The notes under the pieces were generated by a model, which was not told the DNA's origin, ran no database searches, and was given only the letters and a program-made list of their open reading frames with translations. This document shows, one piece after another, positions 1-24,601 of a stretch of DNA of 64,000 nucleotides. The first letter of the stretch is position 1. Each line of letters starts with the position of its first letter. The translations under genes were made by a program, and so were the position numbers. This stretch comes from Perna viridis (taxonomy: Eukaryota), in contig CM074511.1 of NCBI GenBank assembly GCA_037379345.1, positions 17,794,001 through 17,858,000 on the forward strand, written 5' to 3'.

Positions 1-399
1 ATCATTGTGTGTAGATGTTTGACTCAGTTCAATGACTTTTTTAAAGATTCCCTACATAACATTCTGTGTAATAGTTCTACTAGCTTTGTCAATACTCTAG
101 ATTTCAATTATATATGTTACTTTGGTCTAGTCAAGAAGGATAAAAATATAAACTTATACTTTGTAAATACAGTTTTATGTGCTAGAAGATTCTGTGTAGT
201 AAAGAGGAGAAATATCTCTATGAAGGATGATCATTTGATAGACATAGTGCCATATTTTAAAAATGTTCTGCAAAAACATGTGAGTTATGCATACTTGTAT
301 TATAAACAGAAGAAGTGCATGTATTTATTTGAAAAGTATTATTTTAAAAAAAATCCTGTATTAAGGATAAGTAATGATGAAGTACATATTGAGTTTTAA
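1..399 (+). CDS. C-terminal fragment of retrotransposon ORF2 (E1), 5'-truncated by the window edge
   Basis: Open frame from base 1 (IIVCRCLTQFNDFFKD...NPVLRISNDEVHIEF) that aligns with the ends of ORF2 in E2 and E3. Confidence 0.9.
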   Translation: MIVCRCLTQFNDFFKDSLHNILCNSSTSFVNTLDFNYICYFGLVKKDKNINLYFVNTVLCARRFCVVKRRNISMKDDHLIDIVPYFKNVLQKHVSYAYLYYKQKKCMYLFEKYYFKKNPVLRISNDEVHIEF

Positions 400-530
400 T
401 TGAGATCTGTTGTTAAAAATTGTTACAATTCTAACCAACACTGTGATAATATGAATTAATGGGAGACTAGCCCAATAATTCTTTTATGAATGTATTTATT
501 TGAATAAAATTTTATCAAAATAAAAAAAAA
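1..530 (+). mobile_element. Tx1/L1-clade non-LTR retrotransposon, copy E1 (3' part only), inserted in 5S rDNA
   Basis: ORF2 C-terminus homologous to E2/E3, 3'UTR stem-loop at 453-481, AATAAA, and an A-tail abutting 5S nt 28 at position 531. Confidence 0.92.
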
Positions 531-622
531 CCGGTTCTCGTCCGATCACCGAAGTTAAGCAGCGTCGAGTCCGGTTAGTACTTGGATGGGTGACCGCCTG
601 GGAATACCGGATGCCGTACACA
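531..622 (+). rRNA. 5S rRNA: 5S rRNA gene, 3' part (nt 28-119), interrupted by E1
   Basis: CCGGTTCTCGTCCGATCACCGAAGTTAAGC...GGTTAGTACTTGGATGGGTGACCGCCTGGGAATACCGG is canonical metazoan 5S containing the A box, intermediate element and C box. Confidence 0.97.
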
Positions 623-632
623 TTTCCTTTTT
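623..632 (+). terminator. Pol III T-run terminator of 5S (equivalents at 7322-7329 and 13996-14004)
   Basis: TTTCCTTTTT immediately after the 5S 3' end. Confidence 0.8.
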
Positions 633-1253
633 AGTTTCCTTCTCTTTTTATTTTATCACATAATTTTTCACAGGTTGATATTAGAGTATCCGTTCTTTGT
701 ATTAGAGTAAGCATTTAATGAAAATCTAAAATTGCAAAGCTAGTTATAAGTTTTTTAAAAGTACGAAACGAATAAGGGGGCGGGAGTATACACATTGCAT
801 GACTTGGGGACGACTTCCATCTTGCAATTGTGACTAGAATTTGGACGTCGCATGGCGACAGGCAGATGAAAAAGAGGCACGTTTGGAAGCGGCCGGTGAG
901 TAAATTTCTCTAGTCTATTTAAAACCAATTTGACAGGTTACATTACCAATATTGGATCAATTGAGTCAAAAATTAGCGCGCGCACGGACTCTTCGTGCGC
1001 GGACTGCTCAAGACAAATGAACCCCCCTCTTTGGACACAACCAGAAAAGGGAAAGGAAAGTAAGAATAAACCTGCATTTGTTATCTGCTTGTGGTTATGC
1101 GTCGGTTTGGAATTCATTTTGGAATTTTATGATATTTTTTTTGTGTAAAAACGTTTTATTTGAAATCATTATTTTCGTCACTCTGTTCATACTCGATTTA
1201 CACGACGGGACCATATTTCATGAAACTTCAGTTTGTTAAGGTACCAGAAAGTT

Positions 1254-1258
1254 TATAA
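1254..1258 (+). promoter_or_regulatory. TATA-like element at -28 of 5S (also 7951-7955)
   Basis: TATAA at the same -28 offset before both 5S starts. Upstream TATA-like boxes are typical of invertebrate 5S genes. It is lost in the terminal copy. Confidence 0.65.
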
Positions 1259-1281
1259 GGCAATATTTGACAGTATTTACT

Positions 1282-1335
1282 GTCTACGACCATATCACGC
1301 TGAAAGCACCGGTTCTCGTCCGATCACCGAAGTTA
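1282..1335 (+). rRNA. 5S rRNA: 5S rRNA gene, 5' part (nt 1-54), interrupted by E2
   Basis: GTCTACGACCATATCACGCTGAAAGCACCGGTTCTCGTCCGATCACCGAAGTTA followed by non-5S sequence. Confidence 0.96.
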
Positions 1336-1590
1336 GGTCGGTTTTTGGATGCATCATATGTAGGATGTAAACATTGTGTCGTCCGAGAATTTTTCTTTGT
1401 TTGGTGAGTTCTTCGCCGTATTTTTGTGTGTAAACATTTCCTGAACATTGTTAGATGATATTTGCTTTAAGGTGATAATAGTTTCCATATAAATATTCGT
1501 TTTATATCCCCTTTTCCTGCTTTTTCGTAGCAGGAAAAAGGGGGAGGAAAGGTGCGCTCGATTCTTTTCTGGAGATCCATCTAAGAACTA

Positions 1591-3189
1591 ATGGCGAACT
1601 TTGAAAGAAGTGGATCAGAAAGGTCCAATAGAAAGTCTTTTAATGTTGAAAATGAATTTTCAAAGGAGAAAACTGTTTTAATTTCATGTGTACTTGTAGG
1701 TTTTGGGAAAGTAGAACCTGATTCAGTAATTGATGAAATTGAATCGAAATGTGGTAGAGGAAGTGTTATAGCATGTGTGCCAAAGACCGGCAATGGATAT
1801 GAAGTTGTATTTAGAGAGAGGCAGATGATGGAACCAATTCTTGGTGATTTATCAGTCAGTGGTAAAACATTTAAAGTGACTGAATTAGAATCCAGCTTCA
1901 GATATGTTTCAATACTCAACTTGAGTATGTATGTTACTGATGCTGAAATCATTGAAAGATTTTCAAAAATTGGAGTTGAAGTGGTGTCACCAATTAAAAA
2001 ACATAAGATGAAGTCGAAAAACTATACTTATGATGGAACAAGAGTATTTAAGGCAAAACTTCCGCCTAATATGAAATTCATCCCCTACTCGATGAAGTTC
2101 TCAGTGAATGAAAAAGAAACTGCATACTATCGTGTGATCCACAATCATCAAGTTAGAGTGTGCCATGGGTGTTTTAGCCCGGACCACATATATAAAGATT
2201 GTCCTGATTTCAAGTGTTTTGAGTGTGGCGAGCAAGATCATATTAGTAGGAAATGCTTGAAAAATAAGTGTTCTTTCTGCTTTTACAAGAAGGAGAACTG
2301 TAAGTGTGAAACCTTGAGGAAGACAGACGTGGGTAATTCATGTACAGAATTCCAAACTGATTCCTACTCAGACATTTTGAAGGATCATGACATTCAACAT
2401 TCAAGTGACAGAATGTTTCATACAGAAAATGATGATTCAAGTGATGTTTCTGAAGATGATGAATGGGCACAGAACACTAGAAGATGTGAAAATGTTGTCA
2501 GTAGTGTTCATTCCCGTTGTCGTGATGATGTCAGTCATGTTGACACTAATGGCGATGCTATCCATACAACTGTGGAGGCGGTTGTTGAGCCGATAGCAAA
2601 TGGTGATAATGGTGTTGCTAGCCATATCACAGATGATGTTCCAAATGGTGTTGCTAGCCAGTGTATTGATGAATGTGACGGTGCTAGTCACGATGGAGAG
2701 AATCATGAAGTGGATGGTGATGACGTTTCTGAGGTGTTAGATGATGTTTGTGACATGGTTCATGGTGTTGAAGATATTGTAAGTGGTAAAGATAAAGAAA
2801 AAGTAGAATCAGAAATTGATCATGACAATCTTACTAATAATATAGATGTTAGCCATGTTAATTTGGTTGAATTTAATGATGTCTCTGGTGTATCTGAGAA
2901 TAATGTTAAAGATATTGATCATATATCTAATATAGAAAATACTGTCTCCTCTCAGGATAAAATCAAAAGCCAGGGAGGAGTCAGCCATAGTACTTGTGAT
3001 ACTTTGGATGATTTTGAAATGGACACTCATTCATTGACAAGTGATTGTCAGTTGACGAGTATTGATGAGTTTACTGTTGTGGGTAAGAAAAAATCCTACT
3101 TGGGTATCAAAAGGCGAAATAAATTTCAGATTAAACCTAATTTAAAGGCAGCTAGATTGTCAAATGTTAAAAATAAGTTAATGAAGTAA
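1591..3189 (+). CDS. Retrotransposon ORF1 (gag-like nucleic-acid-binding protein with CCHC zinc knuckles), 532 aa
   Basis: CHGCFSPDHIYKDC and CFECGEQDHISRKC knuckles, a further Cys cluster, an acidic low-complexity region and a basic C-terminus; layout typical of Tx1 ORF1. Confidence 0.92.
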   Translation: MANFERSGSERSNRKSFNVENEFSKEKTVLISCVLVGFGKVEPDSVIDEIESKCGRGSVIACVPKTGNGYEVVFRERQMMEPILGDLSVSGKTFKVTELESSFRYVSILNLSMYVTDAEIIERFSKIGVEVVSPIKKHKMKSKNYTYDGTRVFKAKLPPNMKFIPYSMKFSVNEKETAYYRVIHNHQVRVCHGCFSPDHIYKDCPDFKCFECGEQDHISRKCLKNKCSFCFYKKENCKCETLRKTDVGNSCTEFQTDSYSDILKDHDIQHSSDRMFHTENDDSSDVSEDDEWAQNTRRCENVVSSVHSRCRDDVSHVDTNGDAIHTTVEAVVEPIANGDNGVASHITDDVPNGVASQCIDECDGASHDGENHEVDGDDVSEVLDDVCDMVHGVEDIVSGKDKEKVESEIDHDNLTNNIDVSHVNLVEFNDVSGVSENNVKDIDHISNIENTVSSQDKIKSQGGVSHSTCDTLDDFEMDTHSLTSDCQLTSIDEFTVVGKKKSYLGIKRRNKFQIKPNLKAARLSNVKNKLMK

Positions 3190-3191
3190 CA

Positions 3192-6100
3192 ATGGAGTGG
3201 AATGTGTCATTAGTTATGAACTTTTGTTTTGTGATGGCTACTTTTAACTTCATTAGCCTTAATTGTAATGGTTTGTGTGACAAAAATAAAAGGGATTGTA
3301 TTTTTGCATTATGTATTGAAAGAAAATATGACATTGTTTGTTTACAGGAAACATTTTGGACTGATAAATTGTATGATGATATTCAAATTGATAAAACTGT
3401 ATGGGATGGTGAGATTTGTGCCAGTAATAGCATTTGTAATAGGAAAGGGGTTGCCATTCTTGTAAGTAAAAGGTTGAAAAATGTTTTTAAAGTTTGTGAG
3501 AGTGTATGTGGAAGATTAGTTCATATACAAGGTAAAATTCTTGACAAAAGTTTGGACATAATTAATTTGTATGCTCCAAATAATGTTAGTGAAAAGTGTA
3601 ATTTTTTCAATGATTGTAAAAGTAAAATATATGGAGATGAATTTATTATAATAGCAGGTGATTATAATACCATTCTTTCCCCTTTAGACAAAAGTGGGAA
3701 AACTGTTTTTTATGCTGACAGATCTTTAAAATGTCTGACTGAATTGATAAATGAAAAAGGTTTATCTGATGTATGGAGAGATAGAAATGTAGGTATTAAA
3801 ATGTTTTCAAGAAAACAAGTTGTACAAAGATTTTTAACTCAAAGTAGAATTGATTATTTTTTAGTTTCTTGTAATTTGAAACCATTTATAAAGAATGTTT
3901 TTTACAATGATACATCTTTCAGTGATCATTCTATTGTTAGTATGAAATTAGATTTTTCTGAAGTTGAAAAAGGACCTGGTGTTTGGATTTTTAACAAGTC
4001 CTTATTGAGTGATGATTTTTTTGTTGAAAAAATTAGAAATATCATACTGGATGAAATTGGTTTAGATTTTTATTTTTCACATCCATTAATTTGGTGGGAT
4101 AATTTGAAATATAAAATCAAGAAAACAAGTCAACTCTATGGTAAAGAAAAACAGAGAGAGTTATATAGATATTATAGAATACAGAATAAGTTACAAGAAT
4201 TGTCAATAAAGGCTGGTTGTGGTAATGATATAGATCATGTCAAATATTTAGAGTTGAAAGAGGAACTTGAAAGTTTAGAAAAACATAGATGTAATGGTGC
4301 TGTTATAAGATCCAAATGTCAATATTCATTAGAAAGTGATAAAAATACAGCCTATTTTTTGAATTTAGAGAAACAAAGACAGAATAGAAATATGATAAAT
4401 GGTTTAAAATATTGTGATGGTAATGTTGTCAGTGAAACTGCTGAAATTTTAGATGTTATTTATAGTTTTTATAAAAGGCTATTTTCTTGTGTACTAACTG
4501 ATTATGAAGCAATTGATAAAATGTTAGATTGTATTAACGTCAATGTTGACGTTTGTGATGTTGAAAAATGTGATGAGGATATTAATATTGAAGAAATAAA
4601 AACCTCTATAAAAGGTATGAAACAAGGAAAAACACCTGGTCCTGATGGACTTACGGTGGAGTTTTATTTATATTTTTTTAATGAGTTGAAAGATGTTTTG
4701 AAATATATTTATGATACAGTTGAAGATAATAAAGTTTTATCTAGGTCTATGAGGTATGGAATGATTAACCTAATTTATAAAAATAGAGGTGACAAAACTG
4801 ACTTGAAAAATTTTAGACCTATCAGTTTATTGAATGTAGATTATAAAATATTAGCAAGAGTCATGGCAAATAGGTTTAAATTTGTACTTCCAAAGATTAT
4901 TTCACCAACTCAGAGTTGTTGTATAATAGGTAAAGACATCTCTGATACTACTGTTACTGTAAGAGACATAATTGACTTGGTTGAAATGGATAATCTAGAA
5001 TGTTATTTGTTAAAGTTAGATCAGGAAAAGGCTTTTGACAGGGTTGGGCATGAATATCTTTTCTCGGTTTTACAAAAATTTGGTTTTGGGGAGAGATTTA
5101 TATCTTGGATAAAAGTTTTTTATACAGATATTTTTAGTACTGTCAAGTGCAATGGTTTCCTATCCAAATATTTTCCATTGGCAAACTCTGTTAAACAAGG
5201 TTGCCCAATATCTGCTTTATTGTATGTTTTAGCTGCTGAACCTTTAAGTATAATGATCAAAAAGAATGATAGAATTCAAGGTATTAACATTCCTGTTGTG
5301 AATATTGAAGAAAAAATATTTTCACATGCTGATGACACTACATTGATATTGTCTGACAAAAATTCAGTAACTGAATCCTTTAATGTTTTACAATTGTATG
5401 AACAAGCATCTGGGGCAAAATTAAATAAAGATAAATCTGACATTTTGGCATTGGGTACTGGAAAAATATCAAAAAATGATTTAGATGCTTGGAAAATTAA
5501 AGAGTGTGATGGGGTTTTACAGCTTTTAGGCATATGGATTGGCAAGAATAAAAAGTTATGTGATAATCTGAATTGGGAATGCAAAGTGCAGTCTATTTCA
5601 AAAATACTGAATCTTTGGAAAATGAGACAATTGTCAATACATGGTAGAGTAACTGTGATAAATACTCTTTTAATGAGCAAACTTTGGTATACTCTGATGG
5701 TAGTTAATATACCAGAAAAATACTATTTAGATATAAAGAAATTGTGCATCGGGTTTTTGTGGAATGATAAACCATCTTTGGTTGCTTATGATGTTGTTAT
5801 TAATAGAATACTAGATGGAGGTTTGAATTTTTCAGAAATTTTACATAAGATGTATGCGTTTAGACTTAAATTTTTAAGTCGTTTGTTAGATGTAGAGTAC
5901 AGTGCTGTTTGGAAACATCTTTGTACTTATTTCTTTTCCAAAGTACAAGTTATGAAACTTGGTATTGAGATTTTGTTCTGTGAATTTAAGCAGAGACAGT
6001 TGGGGAGTTTACCTGATTTTTATAAATGTATGCTGTTTGCTTGGGGAAAGATACGTGATTATATTGAAATTGATATCAATTTGAATAATGTATTTGACCT

Positions 6101-7091
6101 GCCTTTGGTCAATAATCCTTTAATTACTAATAATGGTAATATGCTGTATATCAAGACTTTTATAGATGCAGGCATTATTAAAGTCAAACATTTAGCATTT
6201 GAATGTAAAAAGGGATTCATGAGAGATGAGTTTGTTCAAGATATTGTTTCTAAAAAGTTTCCACAGGTATCTGCTGCTAAGATTATTAAGGTAGTACAAT
6301 GTATAAAACAATGTATTCCTGATGAATGTAAAGTTTTAGTAGAAAATAAAGAAAATGTTCGTAGAAATCTCAGTTTGAATATAGAATGTAATGTTAATAA
6401 TAGAAAATACTCTTTTCCTAGTACAACAAAGTTTTTTTATTCTATGTTGTTGAAATCATTATCAAAAGAACCGAATGCTGTCAAATATTGGTGTGAGATA
6501 TTTTCTGATTTTGATACTCAAAAAGTCCAAACAATTTTGAACTTTCCATTTTTACCAAGTGATTGGATTGAGTTATCATTTAAAATATTTCATAGAGTTT
6601 TATTTACTAAGGAGAGGTTATTGAGATGTCGCATTACTGATGATTCATTGTGTCCAGTTTGTGACGATATACATGAGGACTTAGAACATTTTATAATTTC
6701 GTGTAGATGTTTGACTCAATTCAATGACTTTTTTAAAGATTTTTTACATAATATATTGTGTAATAGTTCAGCTACCTTTATCAATATGTTAGACTTTGAT
6801 TATCTATGTTATTTCGGTCTACTCAAGAAAGATAAAAAAGTTAACTTTTATTTTGTTAATACTGCTTTATCTGTTAGAAGGTTTTATGTTGTAAAGAGAA
6901 GAAATTTAGTCATGAAAGAGGAGAAAGTTTTGCACATTATTTCTTATTTTAAATCTGTTCTTCAAAAGCATGTTAATTATGCTTACATGTATTATATACA
7001 GAAAAAGAACTTTTCTTTGTTTCAAAAATATTACTTGAATGACAATCCTGTTCTGCGCATCTCTGATGATAATGTTGTGATAGACTTTTAA
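3192..7091 (+). CDS. Retrotransposon ORF2: APE endonuclease, reverse transcriptase and C-terminal CCHC finger, 1299 aa
   Basis: APE motifs LNCNGL, LQET, YAPN, GDYN, SRIDY, SDH. RT motifs PGPDG, RPISLLNVDYKI, LDQEKAFD, KQGCPIS, HADD. Zinc finger CPVCx8Hx4C. Confidence 0.97.
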   Translation: MEWNVSLVMNFCFVMATFNFISLNCNGLCDKNKRDCIFALCIERKYDIVCLQETFWTDKLYDDIQIDKTVWDGEICASNSICNRKGVAILVSKRLKNVFKVCESVCGRLVHIQGKILDKSLDIINLYAPNNVSEKCNFFNDCKSKIYGDEFIIIAGDYNTILSPLDKSGKTVFYADRSLKCLTELINEKGLSDVWRDRNVGIKMFSRKQVVQRFLTQSRIDYFLVSCNLKPFIKNVFYNDTSFSDHSIVSMKLDFSEVEKGPGVWIFNKSLLSDDFFVEKIRNIILDEIGLDFYFSHPLIWWDNLKYKIKKTSQLYGKEKQRELYRYYRIQNKLQELSIKAGCGNDIDHVKYLELKEELESLEKHRCNGAVIRSKCQYSLESDKNTAYFLNLEKQRQNRNMINGLKYCDGNVVSETAEILDVIYSFYKRLFSCVLTDYEAIDKMLDCINVNVDVCDVEKCDEDINIEEIKTSIKGMKQGKTPGPDGLTVEFYLYFFNELKDVLKYIYDTVEDNKVLSRSMRYGMINLIYKNRGDKTDLKNFRPISLLNVDYKILARVMANRFKFVLPKIISPTQSCCIIGKDISDTTVTVRDIIDLVEMDNLECYLLKLDQEKAFDRVGHEYLFSVLQKFGFGERFISWIKVFYTDIFSTVKCNGFLSKYFPLANSVKQGCPISALLYVLAAEPLSIMIKKNDRIQGINIPVVNIEEKIFSHADDTTLILSDKNSVTESFNVLQLYEQASGAKLNKDKSDILALGTGKISKNDLDAWKIKECDGVLQLLGIWIGKNKKLCDNLNWECKVQSISKILNLWKMRQLSIHGRVTVINTLLMSKLWYTLMVVNIPEKYYLDIKKLCIGFLWNDKPSLVAYDVVINRILDGGLNFSEILHKMYAFRLKFLSRLLDVEYSAVWKHLCTYFFSKVQVMKLGIEILFCEFKQRQLGSLPDFYKCMLFAWGKIRDYIEIDINLNNVFDLPLVNNPLITNNGNMLYIKTFIDAGIIKVKHLAFECKKGFMRDEFVQDIVSKKFPQVSAAKIIKVVQCIKQCIPDECKVLVENKENVRRNLSLNIECNVNNRKYSFPSTTKFFYSMLLKSLSKEPNAVKYWCEIFSDFDTQKVQTILNFPFLPSDWIELSFKIFHRVLFTKERLLRCRITDDSLCPVCDDIHEDLEHFIISCRCLTQFNDFFKDFLHNILCNSSATFINMLDFDYLCYFGLLKKDKKVNFYFVNTALSVRRFYVVKRRNLVMKEEKVLHIISYFKSVLQKHVNYAYMYYIQKKNFSLFQKYYLNDNPVLRISDDNVVIDF

Positions 7092-7229
7092 ATATACTTA
7101 TTCATATATACTGTCAATGTAATTTAGGAAAATTTGTGATCTGTGATATGTGAATTATTGGGAGACTAGCCCAATAATTCTTTTATATGATGTTTTACTG
7201 TGAATAAAATTTTATCAAGATAAAAAAAA

Positions 7230-7321
7230 CCGGTTCTCGTCCGATCACCGAAGTTAAGCAGCGTCGAGTCCGGTTAGTACTTGGATGGGTGACCGCCTGG
7301 GAATACCGGATGCCGTAGACA
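7230..7321 (+). rRNA. 5S rRNA: 5S rRNA gene, 3' part (nt 28-119) downstream of E2
   Basis: Same 5S sequence as 531-622, but ends in GTAGAC, which pairs with the 5' GTCTAC. Confidence 0.97.
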
Positions 7322-7978
7322 TTTCTTTTAGTTTCCTTCTCTTTTTATTTTATCACATAATTTTTCACAGGTTGATATTAGAGTATCCGTTCTTTGTATT
7401 AGAGTAAGCATTTAATGAAAATCTAAAATTGCAAAGCTAGTTATTAGTTTTTTAAAAGTACGAAACGAATAAGGGGGCGGGAGTATACACATTGCATGAC
7501 TTGGGGACGACTTCCATCTTGCAATTGTGACTAGAATTTGGACGTCGCATGGCGACAGGCAGATGAAAAAGAGGCACGTTTGGAAGCGGCCGGTGAGTAA
7601 ATTTCTCTAGTCTATTTAAAACCAATTTGACAGGTTACATTACCAATATTGGATCAATTGAGTCAGAAATTAGCGCGCGCACGGACTCCTCGTGGGCGGA
7701 CTGCTCAAGACAAATGAACCCCCTTCTTTGGACACAACCAGAAAAAGGAAAGAAAACTAAGAATAAACCTGCATTTGTTATCTGCTTGTGGTTATGCGTC
7801 GGTTTGGAATTCGTTTTGGAATTTTATGATATTTTTTTGGTGTAAAAACGTTTTATTTGAAATTATTATTTTCGTCACTCTGTTCGTACTCGATTTACAC
7901 GACGGGACTATATTTCATGAAACTTCAGTTTGTTAAGGTACCAGAAAGTTTATAAGGCAATACTTGACAGTATTTACT
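7322..7978. repeat. 5S rDNA non-transcribed spacer, copy 2
   Basis: Nearly identical to spacer 1; unit length 776 bp. Confidence 0.93.
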
Positions 7979-8018
7979 GTCTACGACCATATCACGCTGA
8001 AAGCACCGGTTCTCATCC
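7979..8018 (+). rRNA. 5S rRNA: 5S rRNA gene, 5' part (nt 1-36, or to nt 40 with one mismatch), interrupted by E3
   Basis: GTCTACGACCATATCACGCTGAAAGCACCGGTTCTCaTCC followed by element sequence. Confidence 0.93.
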
Positions 8019-8277
8019 TGGAAGATGGTTTTTGGATGTACCATATGTGAAATGTAAACATCGTGTCGTCCGGAGATTTTTCATTGTTTGGTGAGTTCAT
8101 CGCCTTATCTATGTTCATAAACATTTTCTGAAGATTGCTATTTAATTATTGATTGAATGTGACCACAGTTTGCTTAGAAACAATTGTTTGTTTGCCCCTT
8201 TTCCTGCAATTTCGGTGCAGGAAAAAGGGGGAGGAAGGGTGTGTTTGATTACTATTTGGAGATCTTACTAAAAACCA

Positions 8278-9851
8278 ATGGCTAACTTTGACGGAAGTGG
8301 ACCAGACAGGTCCAATGGAAAGTCGGCTAATTATGATAGCAAATTTTCTAAGGAGAAAACTGTGTTAATTGCTTGTGCTCTGGAGGGTTTTGGAAAACTA
8401 GAGTCTGATTTGTTGATAGATGACAATGAATCGAAATGTGGTATAGGAAGTGTAATTGCATGTGTGCCAAAAACTGGTTACGGCTATGAAATTGTGTTTC
8501 GAGAAAGGCAGATGATGGAACCAGTACTCGGTGATCTGACTGTGGATGGAAAAAGATGCAAAGTGAGTGAATTGCAATCTAGCTTTAGATTAGTTTCGAT
8601 ACTTAATTTGAGTATGTATGTGACTGATGAGGAAATTGTGGATAGATTTAATAAAATTGGTGTTGAAATTGTTTCTGTTATTAAGAAGCATAAGATGAAA
8701 TCAAAGAACAATATTTATGATGGAACAAGAATTTTCAAAGCCAAACTTCCCCCGAATATGAAGTCCATCCCATATTCAATGAAGTTTTCAGTCAATGAGA
8801 AAGAGACTGCATATTACCGCGTGATTCATAATCACCAGGTAAAAGTCTGTAATGGTTGCTTTAGTCCTGACCACATGTATAAGGACTGTCCTGAATTCAA
8901 ATGTTTTGAATGTGGAGAGCAAGGTCATGTCAGCAAGAAATGCTTTAAGAATAAGTGCTCTAAGTGTTTGCATAAGAAAGTTAGCTGTAAGTGTAGTACT
9001 CCAAAGAAAACACACGTAGACAATTCTTTTGCTGAATTCCAAGGAACATTTACACGAGATGACGATGTATGGCCATGTAGCAGAATAATGGATGATGACC
9101 ATACCAATGGTGAGAGTAATATAACTGTTAATGCTCATCTTGATGATGTAAATGATGTCAGTGATAGCGGAAAGAATGATGTTTCGAATCATTCCACTGT
9201 TGAGCGTGGTGGTCAGTCTTCGGCTTGTAGTGATAATGGCGTTGCTAGTCATATCACTGAAGATGATGAGAATATTGATTTAGATGTTATTTCAAGTGTC
9301 GTTGCTAGCCATTGCAGTGATGAGGGTGATGGTAATGGTGATCTGAATGGTGCCGTTTTGGTCAATGATGATGAAGCTGAGATGGTAGATGGTGATGATG
9401 AAGTGTCTGGGGAAGTTGGACAAGATGATAGTATGGTTTATGGTGACCAAGAAAGAAACAAGACAGATAAAGAAGAAAGTAATGTTGATATTGAACTTAA
9501 TGTTAACAATGTTGATTATGTTAAATCTAAAAGTGAATGTGTTATGCCAAAAGAAAATGTTTCAGAAAATGATTGTAAAATAGGTTCTATTTTGAATATA
9601 GAAGCTTCTGTCTCCCCTCTAGAACAAATTAACAGTCAGGGGAAGTCAGTCAGAGTTCATGTGACACTTTAGACGACTTTGAAATGGATACTTTCCTGAT
9701 GACTGATAGTAGTCAAGGGGCAAGTGAAAATGATTTTACTCTTGTAGCTAAGAAAAAAAATGCCTTGGGTGTCAAGAGGCGTAGTAAGATTAATATAAAG
9801 CCTAATCTGAAAGCAGCAAGGTTATCGAATATACATAAAAAATTGAAATAA
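8278..9851 (+). pseudogene. E3 ORF1 with a 1-nt frameshift in a G-run at ~9639-9642; the homologous stop is at 9849-9851
   Basis: The called ORF stops at 9672. The E2-homologous C-terminus (CDTLDDFEMDT...KRRSKINIKPNLKAARLSN) continues in another frame to TAA at 9851. Confidence 0.85.
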
Positions 9852-9857
9852 GGAACA

Positions 9858-12800
9858 ATGGAGTGTTATATGTTTGCTATTTTACATTTTTGTTTTGCGA
9901 TGGCTTCTTTTAATTTTATAAGCCTTAATTATAATGGTCTTTGTGACAAAAATAAAAGAGAGTGTATTTTTGCACTGTGTAATGAAAGGAAATATGATGT
10001 TGTATGTTTACAAGAAACATTCTGGAATGATGATTTATATAAAATTATACAGAATGACAATAGTGTATGGGGTGGTGATATTTTTGCTAGTAATAGTAAT
10101 AGAAAAGGTGTGGCTATTCTTTTAAGTAAAAGATTGAGAAATGTTTATAAAGTTTGTGATAGTATATGTGGAAGATTATTGCATATTCAAGGTAAAGTTG
10201 AAGGTAAAAATGTTGATATAATCAATGTGTATGCTCCTAATAGTATCACTGATAAATGTACTTTTTTTAATGATTGTAAAGACAAAATATATGGAGATGA
10301 ATATTTTATAGTAGTAGGAGATTTCAATACTGCGTTCTGTCCTTTAGATAGAAGTGGAAAAACTACGTTTTATGCAGATAAATCTGTAAAATGTTTAACT
10401 AATTTGATGAATGATAAATGTTTATTTGATGTATGGAGAAATAGAAATATGAATGTCAAAATGTTTTCAAGAAAACAGGTAGTTCAAGGTTTTTTAACAC
10501 AAAGTAGGATTGATTATATTTTGGTATCTAGTAATTTAAAATCATGTATAAGAAATATTTTTTATAGCGACACATGCTTTAGTGATCATAGCATTGTAAA
10601 TATGAAACTTGATTTCTCTGAAGTTGAAAAAGGACCTGGTGTTTGGCTTTTTAATGAAACCTTATTAAATGATGATGTTTATGTTGAAAAGATTAGACAA
10701 ATTTTATTTGATGAAATTGGTTCTGATTTTTATTTGTCAAATCCACTTATTTGGTGGGATAATTTGAAATATAGAGTAAAGAAAGTCAGCCAAATATATG
10801 GAAAAGAGAAACAAAAAGAATTAAATAGAGAGTATTTTAGGTTACAAAATAAGCTGCAAGAAATGTCTGTGAAGTCAGCTTGTGGTATATCAATTGATCA
10901 TGTCAAATATTTAGAATTGAAAGATGAATTAGAAAGTTTAGAAAAACACAAATGTAATGGTGCTATTATTAGATCAAAATGTCAGTATTCAATTGAAAGT
11001 GATAAGAATACAGCTTATTTCTTAAGTTTAGAGAAACATAGACAAAACAGAAATATGATATGTAGTTTAAAAAATTGTGATGGTGTTGTTGTCAATGATT
11101 CTGCTGAAATGTTAGATGTTGTACACAATTTTTATGAGAAACTCTTTTCTTGTGTTCAAACTGATCATGAGGCAATAGAGGAAATGTTAGACTGTGTTAA
11201 CGTTAGTGTTGAAAATTGTGATATTGAAAACTGTGATTGTGAAATTATTAGTGATGAAATTGAAACCTCTATAAAAGGCATGAAAAAGGGTAAAACACCT
11301 GGCCCTGGTGGGCTTACTGTAGAATTTTATTTATACTTTTTTAGTGAGTTGAAACCTGTATTGAAATATATTTATGACTGTATTGGAGAAAATAAAATTT
11401 TGTCAAGATCTATGAGATATGGAATGATTAACCTGATTTATAAGAATAGAGGTGACAAGTCTGACCTGAAAAACTTCAGACCTATAACTTTGTTAAATGT
11501 TGATTATAAAATTTTAGCCAGAGTAATGGCCAACAGATTTAAATTTGTATTACCAAAGATTATATCACCAAATCAGAGTTGTTGTATTATTGGTAAAGAT
11601 ATTTCTGATACTACAGTAAGTATCAGAGATATTATAGAATTAGTAGAAATGGATGATTTGGAATGTTATTTGCTGAAACTTGATCGGGAAAAGGCATTTG
11701 ACAGAGTTGGACATGACTACTTATTTTCTGTATTGCAGAAATTTGGATTTGGGGAGAAATTTATTTCATGGATAAAGATATTTTATACTGACATTTTCAG
11801 CACTGTCAAATTCAATGGTTTTTTGTCCAAGTATTTTCAATTAAAGAACTCTGTAAAACAAGGGTGTCCTATATCAGCTTTGTTATATGTGTTAGTTGCT
11901 GAACCCTTGAGTATTATGATTAAAAGGAATGATAGAATTCATGGTATACAAATTCCCAATGCATCTGGTGAGGAGAAAATATTTTCACATGCAGATGATA
12001 CAACATTGATATTGTCTGACAAAAATTCAGTAAATGAGGCCTTTGGAGTTTTAAATTTGTATGAACAAGCATCTGGGGCAAAATTGAATAAAGATAAATC
12101 TGAAATTTTGGCATTGGGTACCGGAAAGGTATCGAAACAAGAAATAGATGCTTGGAATATTAAAGAGTGTGATGGGGTTCTTCAGCTTTTAGGTATATGG
12201 ATTGGCAAAGACAAAACTGTTTGTGATAATTTAAATTGGGATTGCAAAGCGCAATCTATTTCAAAATTATTGAATTTTTGGAAAATGAGACATTTATCAA
12301 TACAGGGTAGAGTAACGGTTATAAATACCTTGTTGATGAGTAAATTATGGTATACTCTAATGGTGGTTAATATACCTGAGAAATACTATTTAGACATTAA
12401 AAAGATGTGTGTAGATTTTTTGTGGAATAATAAGCCATCATTGGTTGCATATGATGTTATAATAAATAGAGTTTTGAATGGTGGTTTAAATTTTCCAGAT
12501 ATATTTCACAAAATGTATGCTTTTAGACTTAAATTTTTAAGTCGATTGTTAGATAATGATTATAATGCAGTGTGGAAACATACTTGCACTTATTTTTTAT
12601 CAAAAGTTCTAGATATGAATCTTGGTATGGAAATTCTATTTTGTGATCTTAATAATAGACAATTAGGTATTTTACCTGATTTTTTTAAGTGTATGTTATA
12701 TGCTTGGGGAAAGATTCGTACTCATATGGAAATTGATATAAATGTGAATAATGTATTTGATATTCCATTGTTTTATAATCCAATGATAGTAAATGATGGG

Positions 12801-13753
12801 AAAATGTTGTATATTAAACCCTTTGTAGATGCAGGAATAGTTAAAATTAAAGACTTGGCATTTGAATGTAAAAAAGGTTTTTTTTGAAGAACAAATATGT
12901 ACAGGATATAGTCTCTCAAAGGTTTCCTGAGTTAGTTGCTGATAGAATTGTTGATGTAGTTCAGTGTATTAAGCAGTGTATTCCAGAACAGGTAAAACGT
13001 TTAGTCAGAGAAAATGCATATAACTATAATAAACCTGTTTTGAATGTAGTATATAATGATAATGGTAAAAAATATACATTACCTAGAACGGCAAAAATTT
13101 GTTATGGTATGCTCTTAGAAACTAGTACAATAATGCCAAATGCTGTCAGCTACTGGTATGAAGTATTTAGTGATTTTAATGTACAAAAGGTTCAAAATAT
13201 TTTGAATTTTCCATTTTTACCTAGTGACTGTATTGAAACATCGTTTAAAATTTTCCATAGAGTTTTATTTACGAAGGAGAGATTATTCAGATGTCATATT
13301 ACTATTGATTCTTTATGTCCAGTATGTTATGATGTACATGAAGATTTGGAACATCTTATAATTTCATGTAGATGTTTAACTAAATTCAACAACTTTTTGA
13401 AGGATTTCCTACATAATATTTTGTGCAATAGCTCTACAAGATATGTCAATATGCTTGATTTTAATTTTCTATGTTATTTTGGATTAACTGAGAAAGATAA
13501 AAACAGTAACTATTATTTTGTTAATACTGTCTTAGCATTTAGAAAATTTTGTGTTGTGAAAAGGAGAAATGTAGCTGTGAAAGATGAGAAAGTACTAGAT
13601 ATTCTAAATTATTTTAAGTCCGTACTTCAGCGACATGTAAATTATGCTTATATGTATTATAAAAAGAAGAACTTTTCATTGTTTGAAAAATACTACTTGA
13701 AAAGAAATCCTGTTTTACGTATCTGTGACGAAAATGTTGTGATTGACTTTTAG
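9858..13753 (+). pseudogene. E3 ORF2 (APE-RT-CCHC), split by a frameshift in a T8 run at 12878-12885
   Basis: ORFs 9858-12887 and 12884-13753 together align end to end with E2 ORF2. Confidence 0.88.
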
Positions 13754-13903
13754 TATGCAAGCCATTATATAATATGGAAGATTGACTTAACGTACATGAT
13801 ATTAATAACTTTTATCTGTGATATGTGAATTAGTGGGAGATTAGCCCAATAATTCTTTTATATGTAAATATATATCTGTGAATAAACTTTTATCAAGAAA
13901 AAA

Positions 13904-13995
13904 CCGCTTCTCGTCCGATCACCGAAGTTAAGCAGCGTCGAGTCCGGTTAGTACTTGGATGGGTGACCGCCTGGGAATACCGGATGCCGTACACA
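13904..13995 (+). rRNA. 5S rRNA: 5S rRNA gene, 3' part (nt 28-119) downstream of E3
   Basis: 5S sequence with G31C and G116C variants. Confidence 0.96.
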
Positions 13996-14612
13996 TTTCT
14001 TTTTAGTTTCCTTCTCTTTTTATTTTATCACATAATTTTTCACAGGTTGATATTAGAGTATCCGTTCTTTGTATTAGAGTAAGCATTTAATGAAAATCTA
14101 AAATTGCAAAGCTAGTTATTAGTTTTTTAAAAGTACGAAACGAATAAGGGGGCGGGAGTATACACATTGCATGACTTGGGGACGACTTCCATCTTGCAAT
14201 TGTGACTAGAATTTGGACGTCGCATGGCGACAGGCAGATGAAAAAAGAGGCACGTTTGGAAGCGGCCGGTGAGTAAATTTCTCTAGTCTATTTAAAACCA
14301 ATTTGACAGGTTACATTACCAATATTGGATCAATTGAGTCAGAAATTAGCGCGCGCACGGACTCCTCGTGCGCGGACTGCTCAAGACAAATGAACCCCCC
14401 TCTATGGACACAACCAGAAAAAGGAAAGGAAACTAAAAAAAACCTGCATTTGTTATCTGCTTGTGGTTATGCGTCGGTTTGGAATTATTATTTTCGTCAC
14501 TCTGTTCGTACTCGATTTACACGACGGGACCAGATTTCCAGAAAGACAAAATCTTTCCTCAGTTTGTTAATGTACCAGAATATTTAGAAGGCAAATTTTT
14601 ACGCCATTTACT
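13996..14612. repeat. 5S rDNA spacer, copy 3 (terminal), with an internal ~50-bp deletion and a diverged last ~80 bp
   Basis: Near-identical to spacers 1 and 2 up to ~14530, then clearly more diverged. Confidence 0.88.
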
Positions 14613-14657
14613 GTTTACGACCGTATCACGGTTCTCTTCAAGTCCATTAAGTACTTG
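14613..14657 (+). pseudogene. Degenerate terminal 5S pseudogene with internal deletions
   Basis: GTTTACGACCGTATCACG (nt 1-18), then GTTCTC (nt 31-36), then TTCAAGTCCATTAAGTACTTG (similar to nt 61-81). Confidence 0.72.
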
Positions 14658-24453: not shown

Positions 24454-24601
24454 NNNNNNNNNNNNNNNNNNNNNNNNNNNNNNNNNNNNNNNNNNNNNNN
24501 NNNNNNNNNNNNNNNNNNNNNNNNNNNNNNNNNNNNNNNNNNNNNNNNNNNNNNNNNNNNNNNNNNNNNNNNNNNNNNNNNNNNNNNNNNNNNNNNNNNN
24601 N
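24454..24601. other. Assembly gap (148 N)
   Basis: Run of N. Confidence 1.

What the first reader, a model, noticed from the sequence alone, without database searches (positions are those of the whole stretch)
1..14657. 5S rDNA array saturated by a site-specific, 5S-targeting Tx1-type retrotransposon in an apparent mollusc
Seen: three consecutive ~777-bp 5S units are each split by an APE-RT element whose A-tail joins 5S at exactly nt 28 (positions 531, 7230, 13904; target GAAAGCA^CCGGTTCTC), always in sense orientation. No intact 5S gene remains in the window. Known: the Tx1 clade contains sequence-specific families (Mutsu in fish 5S rDNA, Keno in U2, Dewa in tRNA arrays). Inference: this is a 5S-specific family, possibly a new lineage or target site in an invertebrate, behaving as a 5S analogue of R1/R2 in 28S rDNA. 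I cannot confirm novelty without a database search.
Basis: partly seen in the sequence, partly recalled or inferred. Interest (0 to 1): 0.92.

Follow-up and report, generated by a model that had tools for sequence, protein, structure and literature searches.

The report
LINEs inserting inside 5S and tRNA genes
Three related jumping genes (LINE retrotransposons) do sit at exactly the same nucleotide of three neighbouring 5S rRNA genes. The same families also sit inside tRNA genes of some twenty kinds across this mussel-like genome, so they appear to home in on RNA polymerase III genes in general and not on 5S.

Summary
Three 5S units (about 779 bp) are each split by an APE+RT element whose A-tail abuts 5S nt 28 (531, 7230, 13904), all in sense.

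I tabulated 51 independent genomic copies sharing the 3' end:
- 8 lie in 5S genes.
- 40 lie inside tRNA genes of about 20 anticodon classes, mostly at nt 22-24.
- 3 lie in a tRNA-like A/B-box unit inside the U6 repeat.
- None lies elsewhere, and all are in sense.

U6 genes in that same repeat were not hit in the copies read. The 5S array is not saturated either. Intact units lie just upstream on the same contig, and at least 47 intact genes form the main array on another contig.

Relatives with only 32-58% ORF2 identity, from Mytilus edulis and other samples, sit at the same places in tRNA genes and at 5S 27/28.

Best reading: an old L1/Tx1-like clade whose first nick is positioned by the type 1/2 Pol III promoter complex (TFIIIC/TFIIIB), not by local sequence. 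The targeting pattern is shown; the tether is inferred.

This scan has already reported the same phenomenon on other DNA of this genome. I found no published description in the papers I could search.

The parts
1..530 (+). 3' end of element E0 (C-type lineage): ORF2 C-terminus, 3' UTR and A-tail. Its 5' junction lies outside the window, at L008:2646.
   Evidence: 98.9% identical to the copy in L033, which sits in a tRNA with anticodon TGG, and 75% identical to E1. The 5' junction is 5S nt 1-63 followed by the element head, as at a tRNA-Tyr copy in L038.
531..623 (+). 5S rRNA gene nt 28-120, the 3' part of the unit hit by E0.
1282..1335 (+). 5S rRNA gene nt 1-54. Positions 1309-1335 are the 27-bp target-site duplication of E1.
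1336..7229 (+). Element E1, full length (5894 bp) with both ORFs open. 5' UTR 1336-1590, with a conserved hairpin at 1508-1543. ORF1 1591-3189 (532 aa, two CCHC knuckles). ORF2 3192-7091 (1299 aa: APE 22-246, RT 535-752, zf-RVT 1122-1175). 3' UTR hairpin 7152-7180, AATAAA at 7203-7208, A-tail to 7229.
7230..7321 (+). 5S rRNA gene nt 28-120, the 3' part of the unit hit by E1.
7979..8018 (+). 5S rRNA gene nt 1-40. Positions 8006-8018 are the 13-bp target-site duplication of E2; its two copies differ at two positions.
8019..13903 (+). Element E2, a second lineage. It is 79% identical to E1 in DNA over 4.3 kb. ORF2 is 77% and ORF1 55% identical in protein. There is one frameshift near the end of ORF1 and one in ORF2 at about residue 1006.
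13904..13996 (+). 5S rRNA gene nt 28-120, the 3' part of the unit hit by E2.
14611..14640 (+). Degenerate 5S 5' remnant that marks the end of the array.
   Evidence: direct reading

Best explanation
The window holds the edge of a minor 5S rDNA array. Three consecutive units have each been hit, independently, by a different lineage of one old clade of L1/Tx1-like LINEs.

The clade is not 5S-specific. Its members integrate, always in the gene's sense, inside genes with internal Pol III promoters:
- 5S rRNA genes, at nt 27/28;
- tRNA genes of nearly any kind, mostly with nt 22-24 as the first retained base, just 3' of the A box;
- a non-tRNA A/B-box unit.

Proposed mechanism:
1. The element is made as a capped, polyadenylated Pol II transcript. 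This is inferred from the AATAAA 21 nt before the tail and from extra G residues at some 5' junctions.
2. Its ORF1p/ORF2p particle docks on the asymmetric TFIIIC/TFIIIB(-Pol III) complex of type 1 and type 2 genes.
3. Docking places the APE endonuclease so that it nicks the template strand about 20-30 nt into the transcribed region.
4. Reverse transcription is primed there from the poly(A) tail.
5. The other strand is then cut at a variable distance downstream. This gives duplications of gene-internal sequence of 11-36 bp (once about 75 bp, up to the terminator), or small deletions.

Shown: the target spectrum, position, orientation, junction structure, domain content and presence in other hosts. 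Inferred: the protein tether and the Pol II origin of the RNA.
For: - Copy number. The 3' UTR motif occurs 162 times in the genome, and 0 times for the reversed control.
- Target census. I tabulated 51 distinct copies, chosen without regard to their flanks. Eight are in 5S, 40 in tRNA genes of about 20 anticodon classes, 3 in a tRNA-like unit of the U6 repeat, and none elsewhere. All are in sense.
- One lineage, many targets. E1-type copies 97-98% identical to the window's copy sit in both 5S and many tRNAs. The E2-type and C-type lineages do too.
- The position follows the 5' side of the gene. The first retained base is nt 15-25 (mode 22-24) even in tRNAs with introns or long variable arms. 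The distance to the B box meanwhile ranges from 24 to 49 nt or more.
- The same tRNA species is hit at different nucleotides: Ala-AGC at 22 and 24, Ile-TAT at 19/20 and 24/25, Tyr at 22/23 and about 24.
- I saw no similarity between the 5S site and the tRNA sites on reading them side by side; no motif search was run.
- A natural control. In the 691-bp U6 repeat the elements hit the A/B-box unit 3-5 nt after its A box. At least 48 U6 genes are intact, and no tail-U6 junction exists for E1- and C-type tails within the tested spacing.
- 5' junctions are variable, as expected for target-primed reverse transcription.
- Relatives from other samples lie at the same sites. At 58, 43, 42, 42, 41 and 38% ORF2 identity they sit in tRNA-Leu, Ile (two kinds), Lys, His (Mytilus edulis assembly), Phe and Lys. 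One at 32% identity sits at 5S 27/28. On the tree they are spread over the whole sampled clade.
- Domains are APE, RT and zf-RVT. The closest solved protein is human L1 ORF2p (9e-75). The endonuclease catalytic motifs are present.
Against: - No protein contact has been tested, so the tether is an inference by analogy with Dictyostelium TRE5-A and yeast Ty3 (my own knowledge of those systems).
- In 5S the site is exact to the nucleotide in 7 of 8 copies and in a 32%-identical relative. That precision would also fit some local sequence or structure cue.
- Most first retained bases are G (36 of 43) and are usually preceded by A in the target, so the nuclease has at least a weak local preference.
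- One Leu-AAG site, present in two copies 4.2 kb apart that may be one duplicated insertion, lies at nt 37, 24 nt from the B box. One His copy is at nt 15.
- tRNA transcription start sites are unknown, so a constant distance from the start site is untested.
- The absence of U6 hits rests on one pattern search, which covered only E1- and C-type tails within a fixed spacing, and on the copies I read.
- A Patella relative (38% identity) has no Pol III gene at its tail.
Confidence: 0.7

Rival explanations
1. One reading: a strictly 5S rDNA-specific Tx1 family that recognises the sequence GAAAGCA^CCGGTTCTC, an analogue of Mutsu or of R1/R2.
For: All 5S-borne copies join at 27/28 (7 of 8 exactly), across three lineages and in a 32%-identical relative.
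Against: 43 of 51 copies of the same lineages lie in tRNA or tRNA-like genes, which lack that sequence.
Confidence: 0.02
2. The endonuclease (or ORF2p) itself reads a degenerate DNA sequence or shape that happens to be shared by the region after the tRNA D arm and by 5S nt 20-35, with no help from Pol III factors.
For: - The 5S site is exact to the nucleotide.
- The first retained base is G in 36 of 43 tRNA sites and usually follows an A.
- Known target-specific relatives such as Tx1L, R1 and TRAS use sequence-specific endonucleases (cited in PMC8869645).
- The endonuclease's beta-hairpin loop matches the Tx1L-loop chimera LTX better than wild-type L1 endonuclease (63 against 56 bits).
Against: - I saw no common motif between the 5S and tRNA sites on reading them side by side; no motif search was run.
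- The nick wanders by 2-5 nt within one tRNA species.
- A degenerate tRNA-like unit that keeps only A and B boxes is hit at the equivalent place.
- Orientation is 51 of 51 in sense.
Confidence: 0.2
3. Targeting uses the transcribing state, not the promoter factors. The particle would recognise single-stranded DNA or an R-loop of an early Pol III elongation complex, or bind nascent tRNA or 5S RNA.
For: The position (about +22 to +28) and the strict orientation are compatible with a polymerase-linked cue. Pol III genes form R-loops in yeast (abstract of PMC4214602).
Against: U6 genes, also transcribed by Pol III, are spared in the same repeat. There is no direct evidence for this reading.
Confidence: 0.07
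4. Insertion is random, and only copies in redundant Pol III genes survive selection. Alternatively, copies spread within arrays by unequal crossing-over.
For: Some copies are clearly duplicated together with their array unit: L016/L017, L039/L040 and the two copies in L042.
Against: Selection cannot produce one nucleotide position and one orientation in 51 of 51 copies. The three window copies are different lineages with different 5' junctions.
Confidence: 0.01

Closest known systems
Mutsu (Tx1-clade LINE of zebrafish, 5S rRNA gene-specific; Kojima and Fujiwara 2004, Locati et al. 2017, PMC5340908)
   Same: A two-ORF APE-type LINE of about 5.5-6 kb inserted inside 5S genes in tandem arrays. 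It has several subfamilies, many with intact ORFs. Its target lies in the 5' half of 5S.
   Different: Mutsu is described as sequence-specific and confined to 5S, with each subfamily tied to its own target sequence. Here the same lineages also hit about 20 kinds of tRNA gene. I could not obtain Mutsu's exact insertion nucleotide or its sequence, so homology is untested.
Dictyostelium TRE5-A/TRE3 (L1-like LINEs) and yeast Ty3/Ty1 (LTR elements), which target Pol III genes (PMC3159450, PMC5006619)
   Same: They recognise the class of Pol III genes, not one sequence, and show position and orientation rules. TRE5-A targets the TFIIIC/TFIIIB complex (abstract of PMC3159450).
   Different: Those elements land outside the gene, so the gene survives: TRE5-A about 50 bp upstream (PMC3159450), and by my own knowledge TRE3 downstream and Ty3 at the start site. 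The elements here land inside the gene and usually destroy it. The hosts are protists and fungi with compact genomes, not animals.
Dada DNA transposons (PMC3706591, PMC8869645)
   Same: They insert inside tRNA genes (around the A box or the anticodon), 5S genes and snRNA genes of animals.
   Different: They are DDE transposons, not retrotransposons. Each family targets one or a few gene kinds through primary sequence, and U6/U1 families exist.
Dewa and other target-specific Tx1 families (Keno, Kibi, Koshi, Tx1L)
   Same: The same broad L1/Tx1 architecture, with target-specific integration.
   Different: Dewa targets the spacer of a tRNA-Leu repeat (PMC3706591). The others target U2, microsatellites or a transposon. 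Each has a single sequence target.

Membership tests
L1 superfamily / Tx1 clade of non-LTR retrotransposons | ORF2 with an N-terminal APE-type endonuclease, a central RT and a C-terminal Cys/His motif | tested here: met
   Pfam Exo_endo_phos 22-246, RVT_1 535-752 and zf-RVT 1122-1175, the last below its curated cut-off. Human L1 ORF2p is the best solved match, 9e-75 over residues 19-882. Endonuclease catalytic motifs are present.
L1 superfamily / Tx1 clade of non-LTR retrotransposons | ORF1 with CCHC zinc knuckles (the non-mammalian type of ORF1p) | tested here: met
   Two C-X2-C-X4-H-X4-C motifs can be read in ORF1 (DNA at about 2160-2260). The Pfam zf-CCHC match is weak, E 0.0097, below its cut-off.
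L1 superfamily / Tx1 clade of non-LTR retrotransposons | The RT groups with Tx1L, Keno and Mutsu reference sequences in a phylogeny | not testable with these tools
   No Repbase or Tx1 reference sequences were available. Indirect support: Tx1 is the only L1-group clade among the 11 LINE clades listed for bivalves (PMC10294476), and the endonuclease matches the Tx1L-loop chimera LTX best.
Mutsu (5S-specific Tx1 family) | Copies confined to 5S rRNA genes | tested here: not met
   8 of 51 copies are in 5S and 43 are in tRNA or tRNA-like genes.
Mutsu (5S-specific Tx1 family) | Sequence relatedness to MutsuDr elements and the same insertion nucleotide | not testable with these tools
   No Mutsu sequence is held. 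The paper's text gives no coordinate and no supplement is held.
R1/R2-type strict rDNA site specificity | One fixed target sequence in one rRNA gene | tested here: not met
   Many unrelated target sequences are used.
Pol III-gene-targeting retrotransposons (TRE5-A/Ty3 type) | Association with Pol III genes of many kinds, with fixed position and orientation | tested here: met
   51 of 51 copies are in sense, at nt 15-25 of tRNA (one site at nt 37, in two copies) or 27/28 of 5S.
Pol III-gene-targeting retrotransposons (TRE5-A/Ty3 type) | Integration outside the transcribed gene (upstream or downstream), leaving the gene intact | tested here: not met
   Insertions are intragenic. The gene is kept whole only when the duplication reaches the terminator, as in L046.
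Pol III-gene-targeting retrotransposons (TRE5-A/Ty3 type) | Physical interaction of an element protein with TFIIIB, TFIIIC or Pol III | not testable with these tools
   No host factor sequences or binding assay were available.

The most novel reading that the evidence does not exclude
An ancient animal LINE clade, spanning ORF2 identities down to about 32% and found in several hosts including Mytilus, uses the assembled type 1/2 Pol III promoter complex as its address. It integrates at a measured point inside the gene. The '5S-specific' Mutsu of fish could then be a narrowed special case of the same mechanism. This would be the first intragenic, factor-guided Pol III gene targeting by a non-LTR retrotransposon in Metazoa.
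Probability: 0.5. Interest if true: 0.85.

Novelty: new variant of a known kind. Interest (0 to 1): 0.75.

Why it matters
Target-specific LINEs are usually explained by sequence-specific endonucleases. Factor-guided targeting of Pol III genes is known from yeast and Dictyostelium, where it spares the gene.

Here an animal LINE clade seems to combine the two. It selects a whole class of genes (tRNA and 5S) but lands inside them, at a position apparently measured from the promoter.

If so, several things follow:
- It gives a natural system for asking how an L1-type ORF2p can be steered by host DNA-bound factors. That question bears on designing targeted gene insertion with LINE machinery.
- It may account for tRNA and 5S gene decay and turnover in bivalve genomes.
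- It warns that '5S-specific' or 'tRNA-specific' labels based on a single locus can mislead.

Tried and rejected
- Genome letters. I did not try to read flanks by another route, so the census covers 51 copies.
- U6 test. A shorter one ran and found nothing.
- RNA families. Rfam at a permissive threshold on the E1 5' UTR found only the 5S fragment and chance miRNA-like hairpins, and no ribozyme.
- RNA evidence. The one true RNA-seq run laid only 10 reads, mostly on the 5S part. Three runs of uncertain kind hold low-depth fragments. Nothing can be said about transcription, the RNA 5' end or activity.
- Mutsu's insertion nucleotide is not in the paper's text, and no supplement is held.
- ESM Atlas returned only generic RT/endonuclease clusters.
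- Three relatives were uninformative. P0001's contig ends at the ORF2 stop. P0009 shows no tail within 1.5 kb. The Paramuricea locus shows no poly(A) run.
- Rest of the window. 14.7-64 kb holds no ORF of 150 aa or more, no tRNA and no large tandem repeat.
- A box as the ruler for both gene types: rejected. By analogy with the Xenopus 5S control region (my own knowledge) the A box lies near nt 50-64, downstream of the nick, whereas in tRNA genes the nick is 3' of the A box.
Full report
**Observation**

The window is G000:C1:17794001-17858000 of a 723-Mb genome. Rfam finds three 5S matches. Direct reading shows that each is a 5S 3' part (nt 28-120) placed right after the A-tail of a retroelement, at 531, 7230 and 13904. 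The 5S 5' parts start at 1282 and 7979. The unit, without its insert, is about 779 bp. No uninterrupted 5S gene lies in the window. Because A27 merges with the tail, the nick could also be at 26/27.

- Upstream of E1, 5S runs to nt 54, giving a 27-bp duplication (1309-1335 and 7230-7256).
- Upstream of E2, 5S runs to nt 40, giving 13 bp with two mismatches.
- The first element's 5' junction lies outside the window at L008:2646, after 5S nt 63, giving 36 bp.

**The elements**

E1 (1336-7229) is full length.
- ORF1 (1591-3189, 532 aa) carries two CCHC knuckles.
- ORF2 (3192-7091, 1299 aa) has Exo_endo_phos (22-246), RVT_1 (535-752) and zf-RVT (1122-1175).
- The best solved homologue is human LINE-1 ORF2p (9e-75, residues 19-882).
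- The endonuclease keeps the catalytic motifs. It matches the L1 endonuclease chimera carrying the Tx1L hairpin loop (LTX) better than wild-type L1 endonuclease, 63 against 56 bits.
- Tx1 is the only L1-group clade among the LINE clades reported in bivalves (PMC10294476).

I therefore file the element as L1 superfamily, probably Tx1 clade. An RT phylogeny with Tx1 references could not be run.

E2 (8019-13903) is a second lineage. It is 79% identical to E1 in DNA. ORF2 is 77% and ORF1 55% identical in protein. Each ORF has one frameshift.

The fragment at 1-530 belongs to a third lineage, the C-type. It is 98.9% identical to a copy at C1:28.27 Mb and 75% identical to E1. The three hits are therefore independent events.

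All lineages share three features:
- a 3' UTR hairpin (7152-7180 in E1), which shows compensatory changes in a 58%-identical relative;
- an AATAAA 21 nt before the tail;
- a 5' UTR hairpin (1508-1543).

**Genome-wide targets**

The last 330 nt of E1 find 289 candidate places. The 40 that were scored are 98-100% identical and lie on many contigs. A 27-nt 3' UTR motif occurs 162 times, against 0 for the reversed control.

They hold 51 distinct insertions:
- 8 in 5S genes on C1, C5 and C9. Seven join exactly at 27/28 and one starts a base later.
- 40 in tRNA genes of about 20 anticodon classes, including Ala, Arg, Cys, Glu, Gly, His, Ile, Leu, Lys, Pro, Ser, Thr and Tyr.
- 3 in a tRNA-like unit with A box, B box and T-run terminator. 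This unit forms part of the 691-bp U6 repeat on C2.
- None anywhere else, and all in the sense of the gene.

Each of the three lineages in the window also has tRNA-borne copies.

**Position**

Matched to intact paralogues, the first retained tRNA base is nt 22-25 in most cases. Single copies lie at 15 and 19/20. One Leu-AAG site, present in two copies 4.2 kb apart that may be one duplicated insertion, lies at 37.

The position stays the same in tRNAs with introns (Tyr, Ile-TAT) or long variable arms (Leu, Ser). The distance to the B box meanwhile varies from 24 to 49 nt or more. The site is therefore set from the 5' side of the gene.

One tRNA species can be hit at different nucleotides: Ala-AGC at 22 and 24, Ile-TAT at 19/20 and 24/25.

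5' junctions vary:
- duplications of 11-36 bp;
- one duplication of about 75 bp that reaches the terminator, so a whole tRNA-Ala gene is regenerated upstream (L046);
- deletions (L031, L032, L036);
- filler DNA (L035).

A precise 3' junction with a loose 5' junction is what target-primed reverse transcription predicts.

**Which Pol III genes**

The U6 array holds at least 48 intact genes. No E1- or C-type tail lies within the tested 5-35 nt of the U6 ACAGAGA box. Yet the A/B-box unit about 330 bp upstream in the same repeat is hit at least three times, 3-5 nt after its A box.

In tRNA genes the nick is 3' of the A box. In 5S, where by analogy with Xenopus (my own knowledge) the A box lies near nt 50-64, the nick is well upstream of it. 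What the two gene types share is the geometry of TFIIIC/TFIIIB around the start site. That geometry is also my own knowledge and was not tested here.

This is why I favour tethering to the type 1/2 promoter complex. The near-exact 5S site and the G-rich first retained base (36 of 43) still leave room for a local nuclease preference.

**State of the 5S arrays**

The main array is on C9 (35.82-35.98 Mb) and has at least 47 full-scoring genes. It also contains insertions, both in 5S and in interspersed tRNA-Arg(CCT) genes.

The C1 array carries a different 5S variant.
- It has at least five insertions, at C1:17773084, 17785546, 17794530, 17801229 and 17807903.
- It also has intact units upstream (L031:1054 and 1865).
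- It ends at about 14.64 kb of the window.

'Saturated' therefore applies only locally.

**Other hosts**

ORF2 relatives from public assemblies sit at the same places.

| Relative | ORF2 identity | Target |
|---|---|---|
| P0005 | 58% | tRNA-Leu |
| P0013 | 43% | tRNA-Ile(TAT) and tRNA-Ile(AAT), in two samples |
| P0033 | 42% | tRNA-Lys |
| P0028 (Mytilus edulis assembly) | 42% | tRNA-His |
| P0042 | 41% | tRNA-Phe |
| P0075 | 38% | tRNA-Lys |
| P0103 | 32% | 5S, with the first retained base at C28 and a 5S 5' part upstream |

A Patella relative (38%) has no Pol III gene at its tail. On a midpoint-rooted tree the Pol III-borne lineages are spread over the whole sampled clade. The habit is old and not peculiar to this genome.

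**Expression**

The one true RNA-seq run gave only ten reads. Other runs are of uncertain kind. Activity is suggested only by E1's intact ORFs and the 97-98% identity among E1-type copies.

**Literature**

- Mutsu is 5S-specific in zebrafish (PMC5340908).
- Dewa targets a tRNA-Leu spacer (PMC3706591).
- Dada DNA transposons insert in tRNA, 5S and snRNA genes by sequence (PMC8869645).
- TRE5-A targets the TFIIIC/TFIIIB complex about 50 bp upstream of tRNA genes (PMC3159450).
- Six full-text searches found no description of LINEs inserting inside tRNA genes of all kinds plus 5S.

Earlier reports of this scan on other DNA of the same genome reached the same reading. I reached it independently, before consulting them. 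New here are the window's junction anatomy, the U6-repeat control and the cross-sample copies.

**Verdict**

The 5S-specific interpretation is not. The real feature is a class-specific, intragenic, Pol III gene-targeting LINE clade: a new variant of known kinds, with an inferred factor-guided mechanism.

Noticed in passing
L042/L043 (G000:C2:52193136-52203265), with the intact form at for example L043 (reverse strand) about 3210-3330: Each 691-bp U6 repeat unit holds, about 330 bp upstream of U6, a tRNA-like unit that ARAGORN does not call. It has an A box (TAGCTGAGGGG), a B box (GGTTCAAATCT) and a T12-16 terminator. It may be an unannotated small Pol III gene linked to U6.
   Followed up: partly
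L046:350-470 (G000:C3, about 46745360-46745480): An E1-type insertion has a target-site duplication of about 75 bp that runs to the Pol III terminator. A complete tRNA-Ala(AGC) gene therefore survives upstream of the element. Long duplications can make the insertion harmless to its target.
   Followed up: partly
window 1508-1543, and the same place in E2, L046 and L051: A 13-bp GC/AT hairpin (CCCCTTTTCCTGC ... GCAGGAAAAAGGGG) in the 5' UTR is nearly invariant. It holds between lineages that are otherwise 79% identical and in an element from another sample. Its function is unknown and it has no Rfam match.
   Followed up: partly
L061:1-560 (ENA contig, host unknown): Two 5S 5' fragments, each followed by element-head sequence, lie in tandem upstream of a 5S-inserted relative with 32% ORF2 identity. 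This suggests repeated hits or rearrangement at one 5S site.
   Followed up: no
G000:C9:35826632-35982375: The main 5S array has units spaced at about 287 and 718 bp. It is interspersed with tRNA-Arg(CCT) genes on the opposite strand, several of which are also hit by the LINEs.
   Followed up: partly
window 24454-24601: A run of 148 N (assembly gap or masked stretch). I left it as it is.
   Followed up: no
window 14660-64000: No ORF of 150 aa or more, no tRNA and no large tandem repeat. Apart from the array edge, the rest of the window looks like ordinary AT-rich non-coding DNA.
   Followed up: partly
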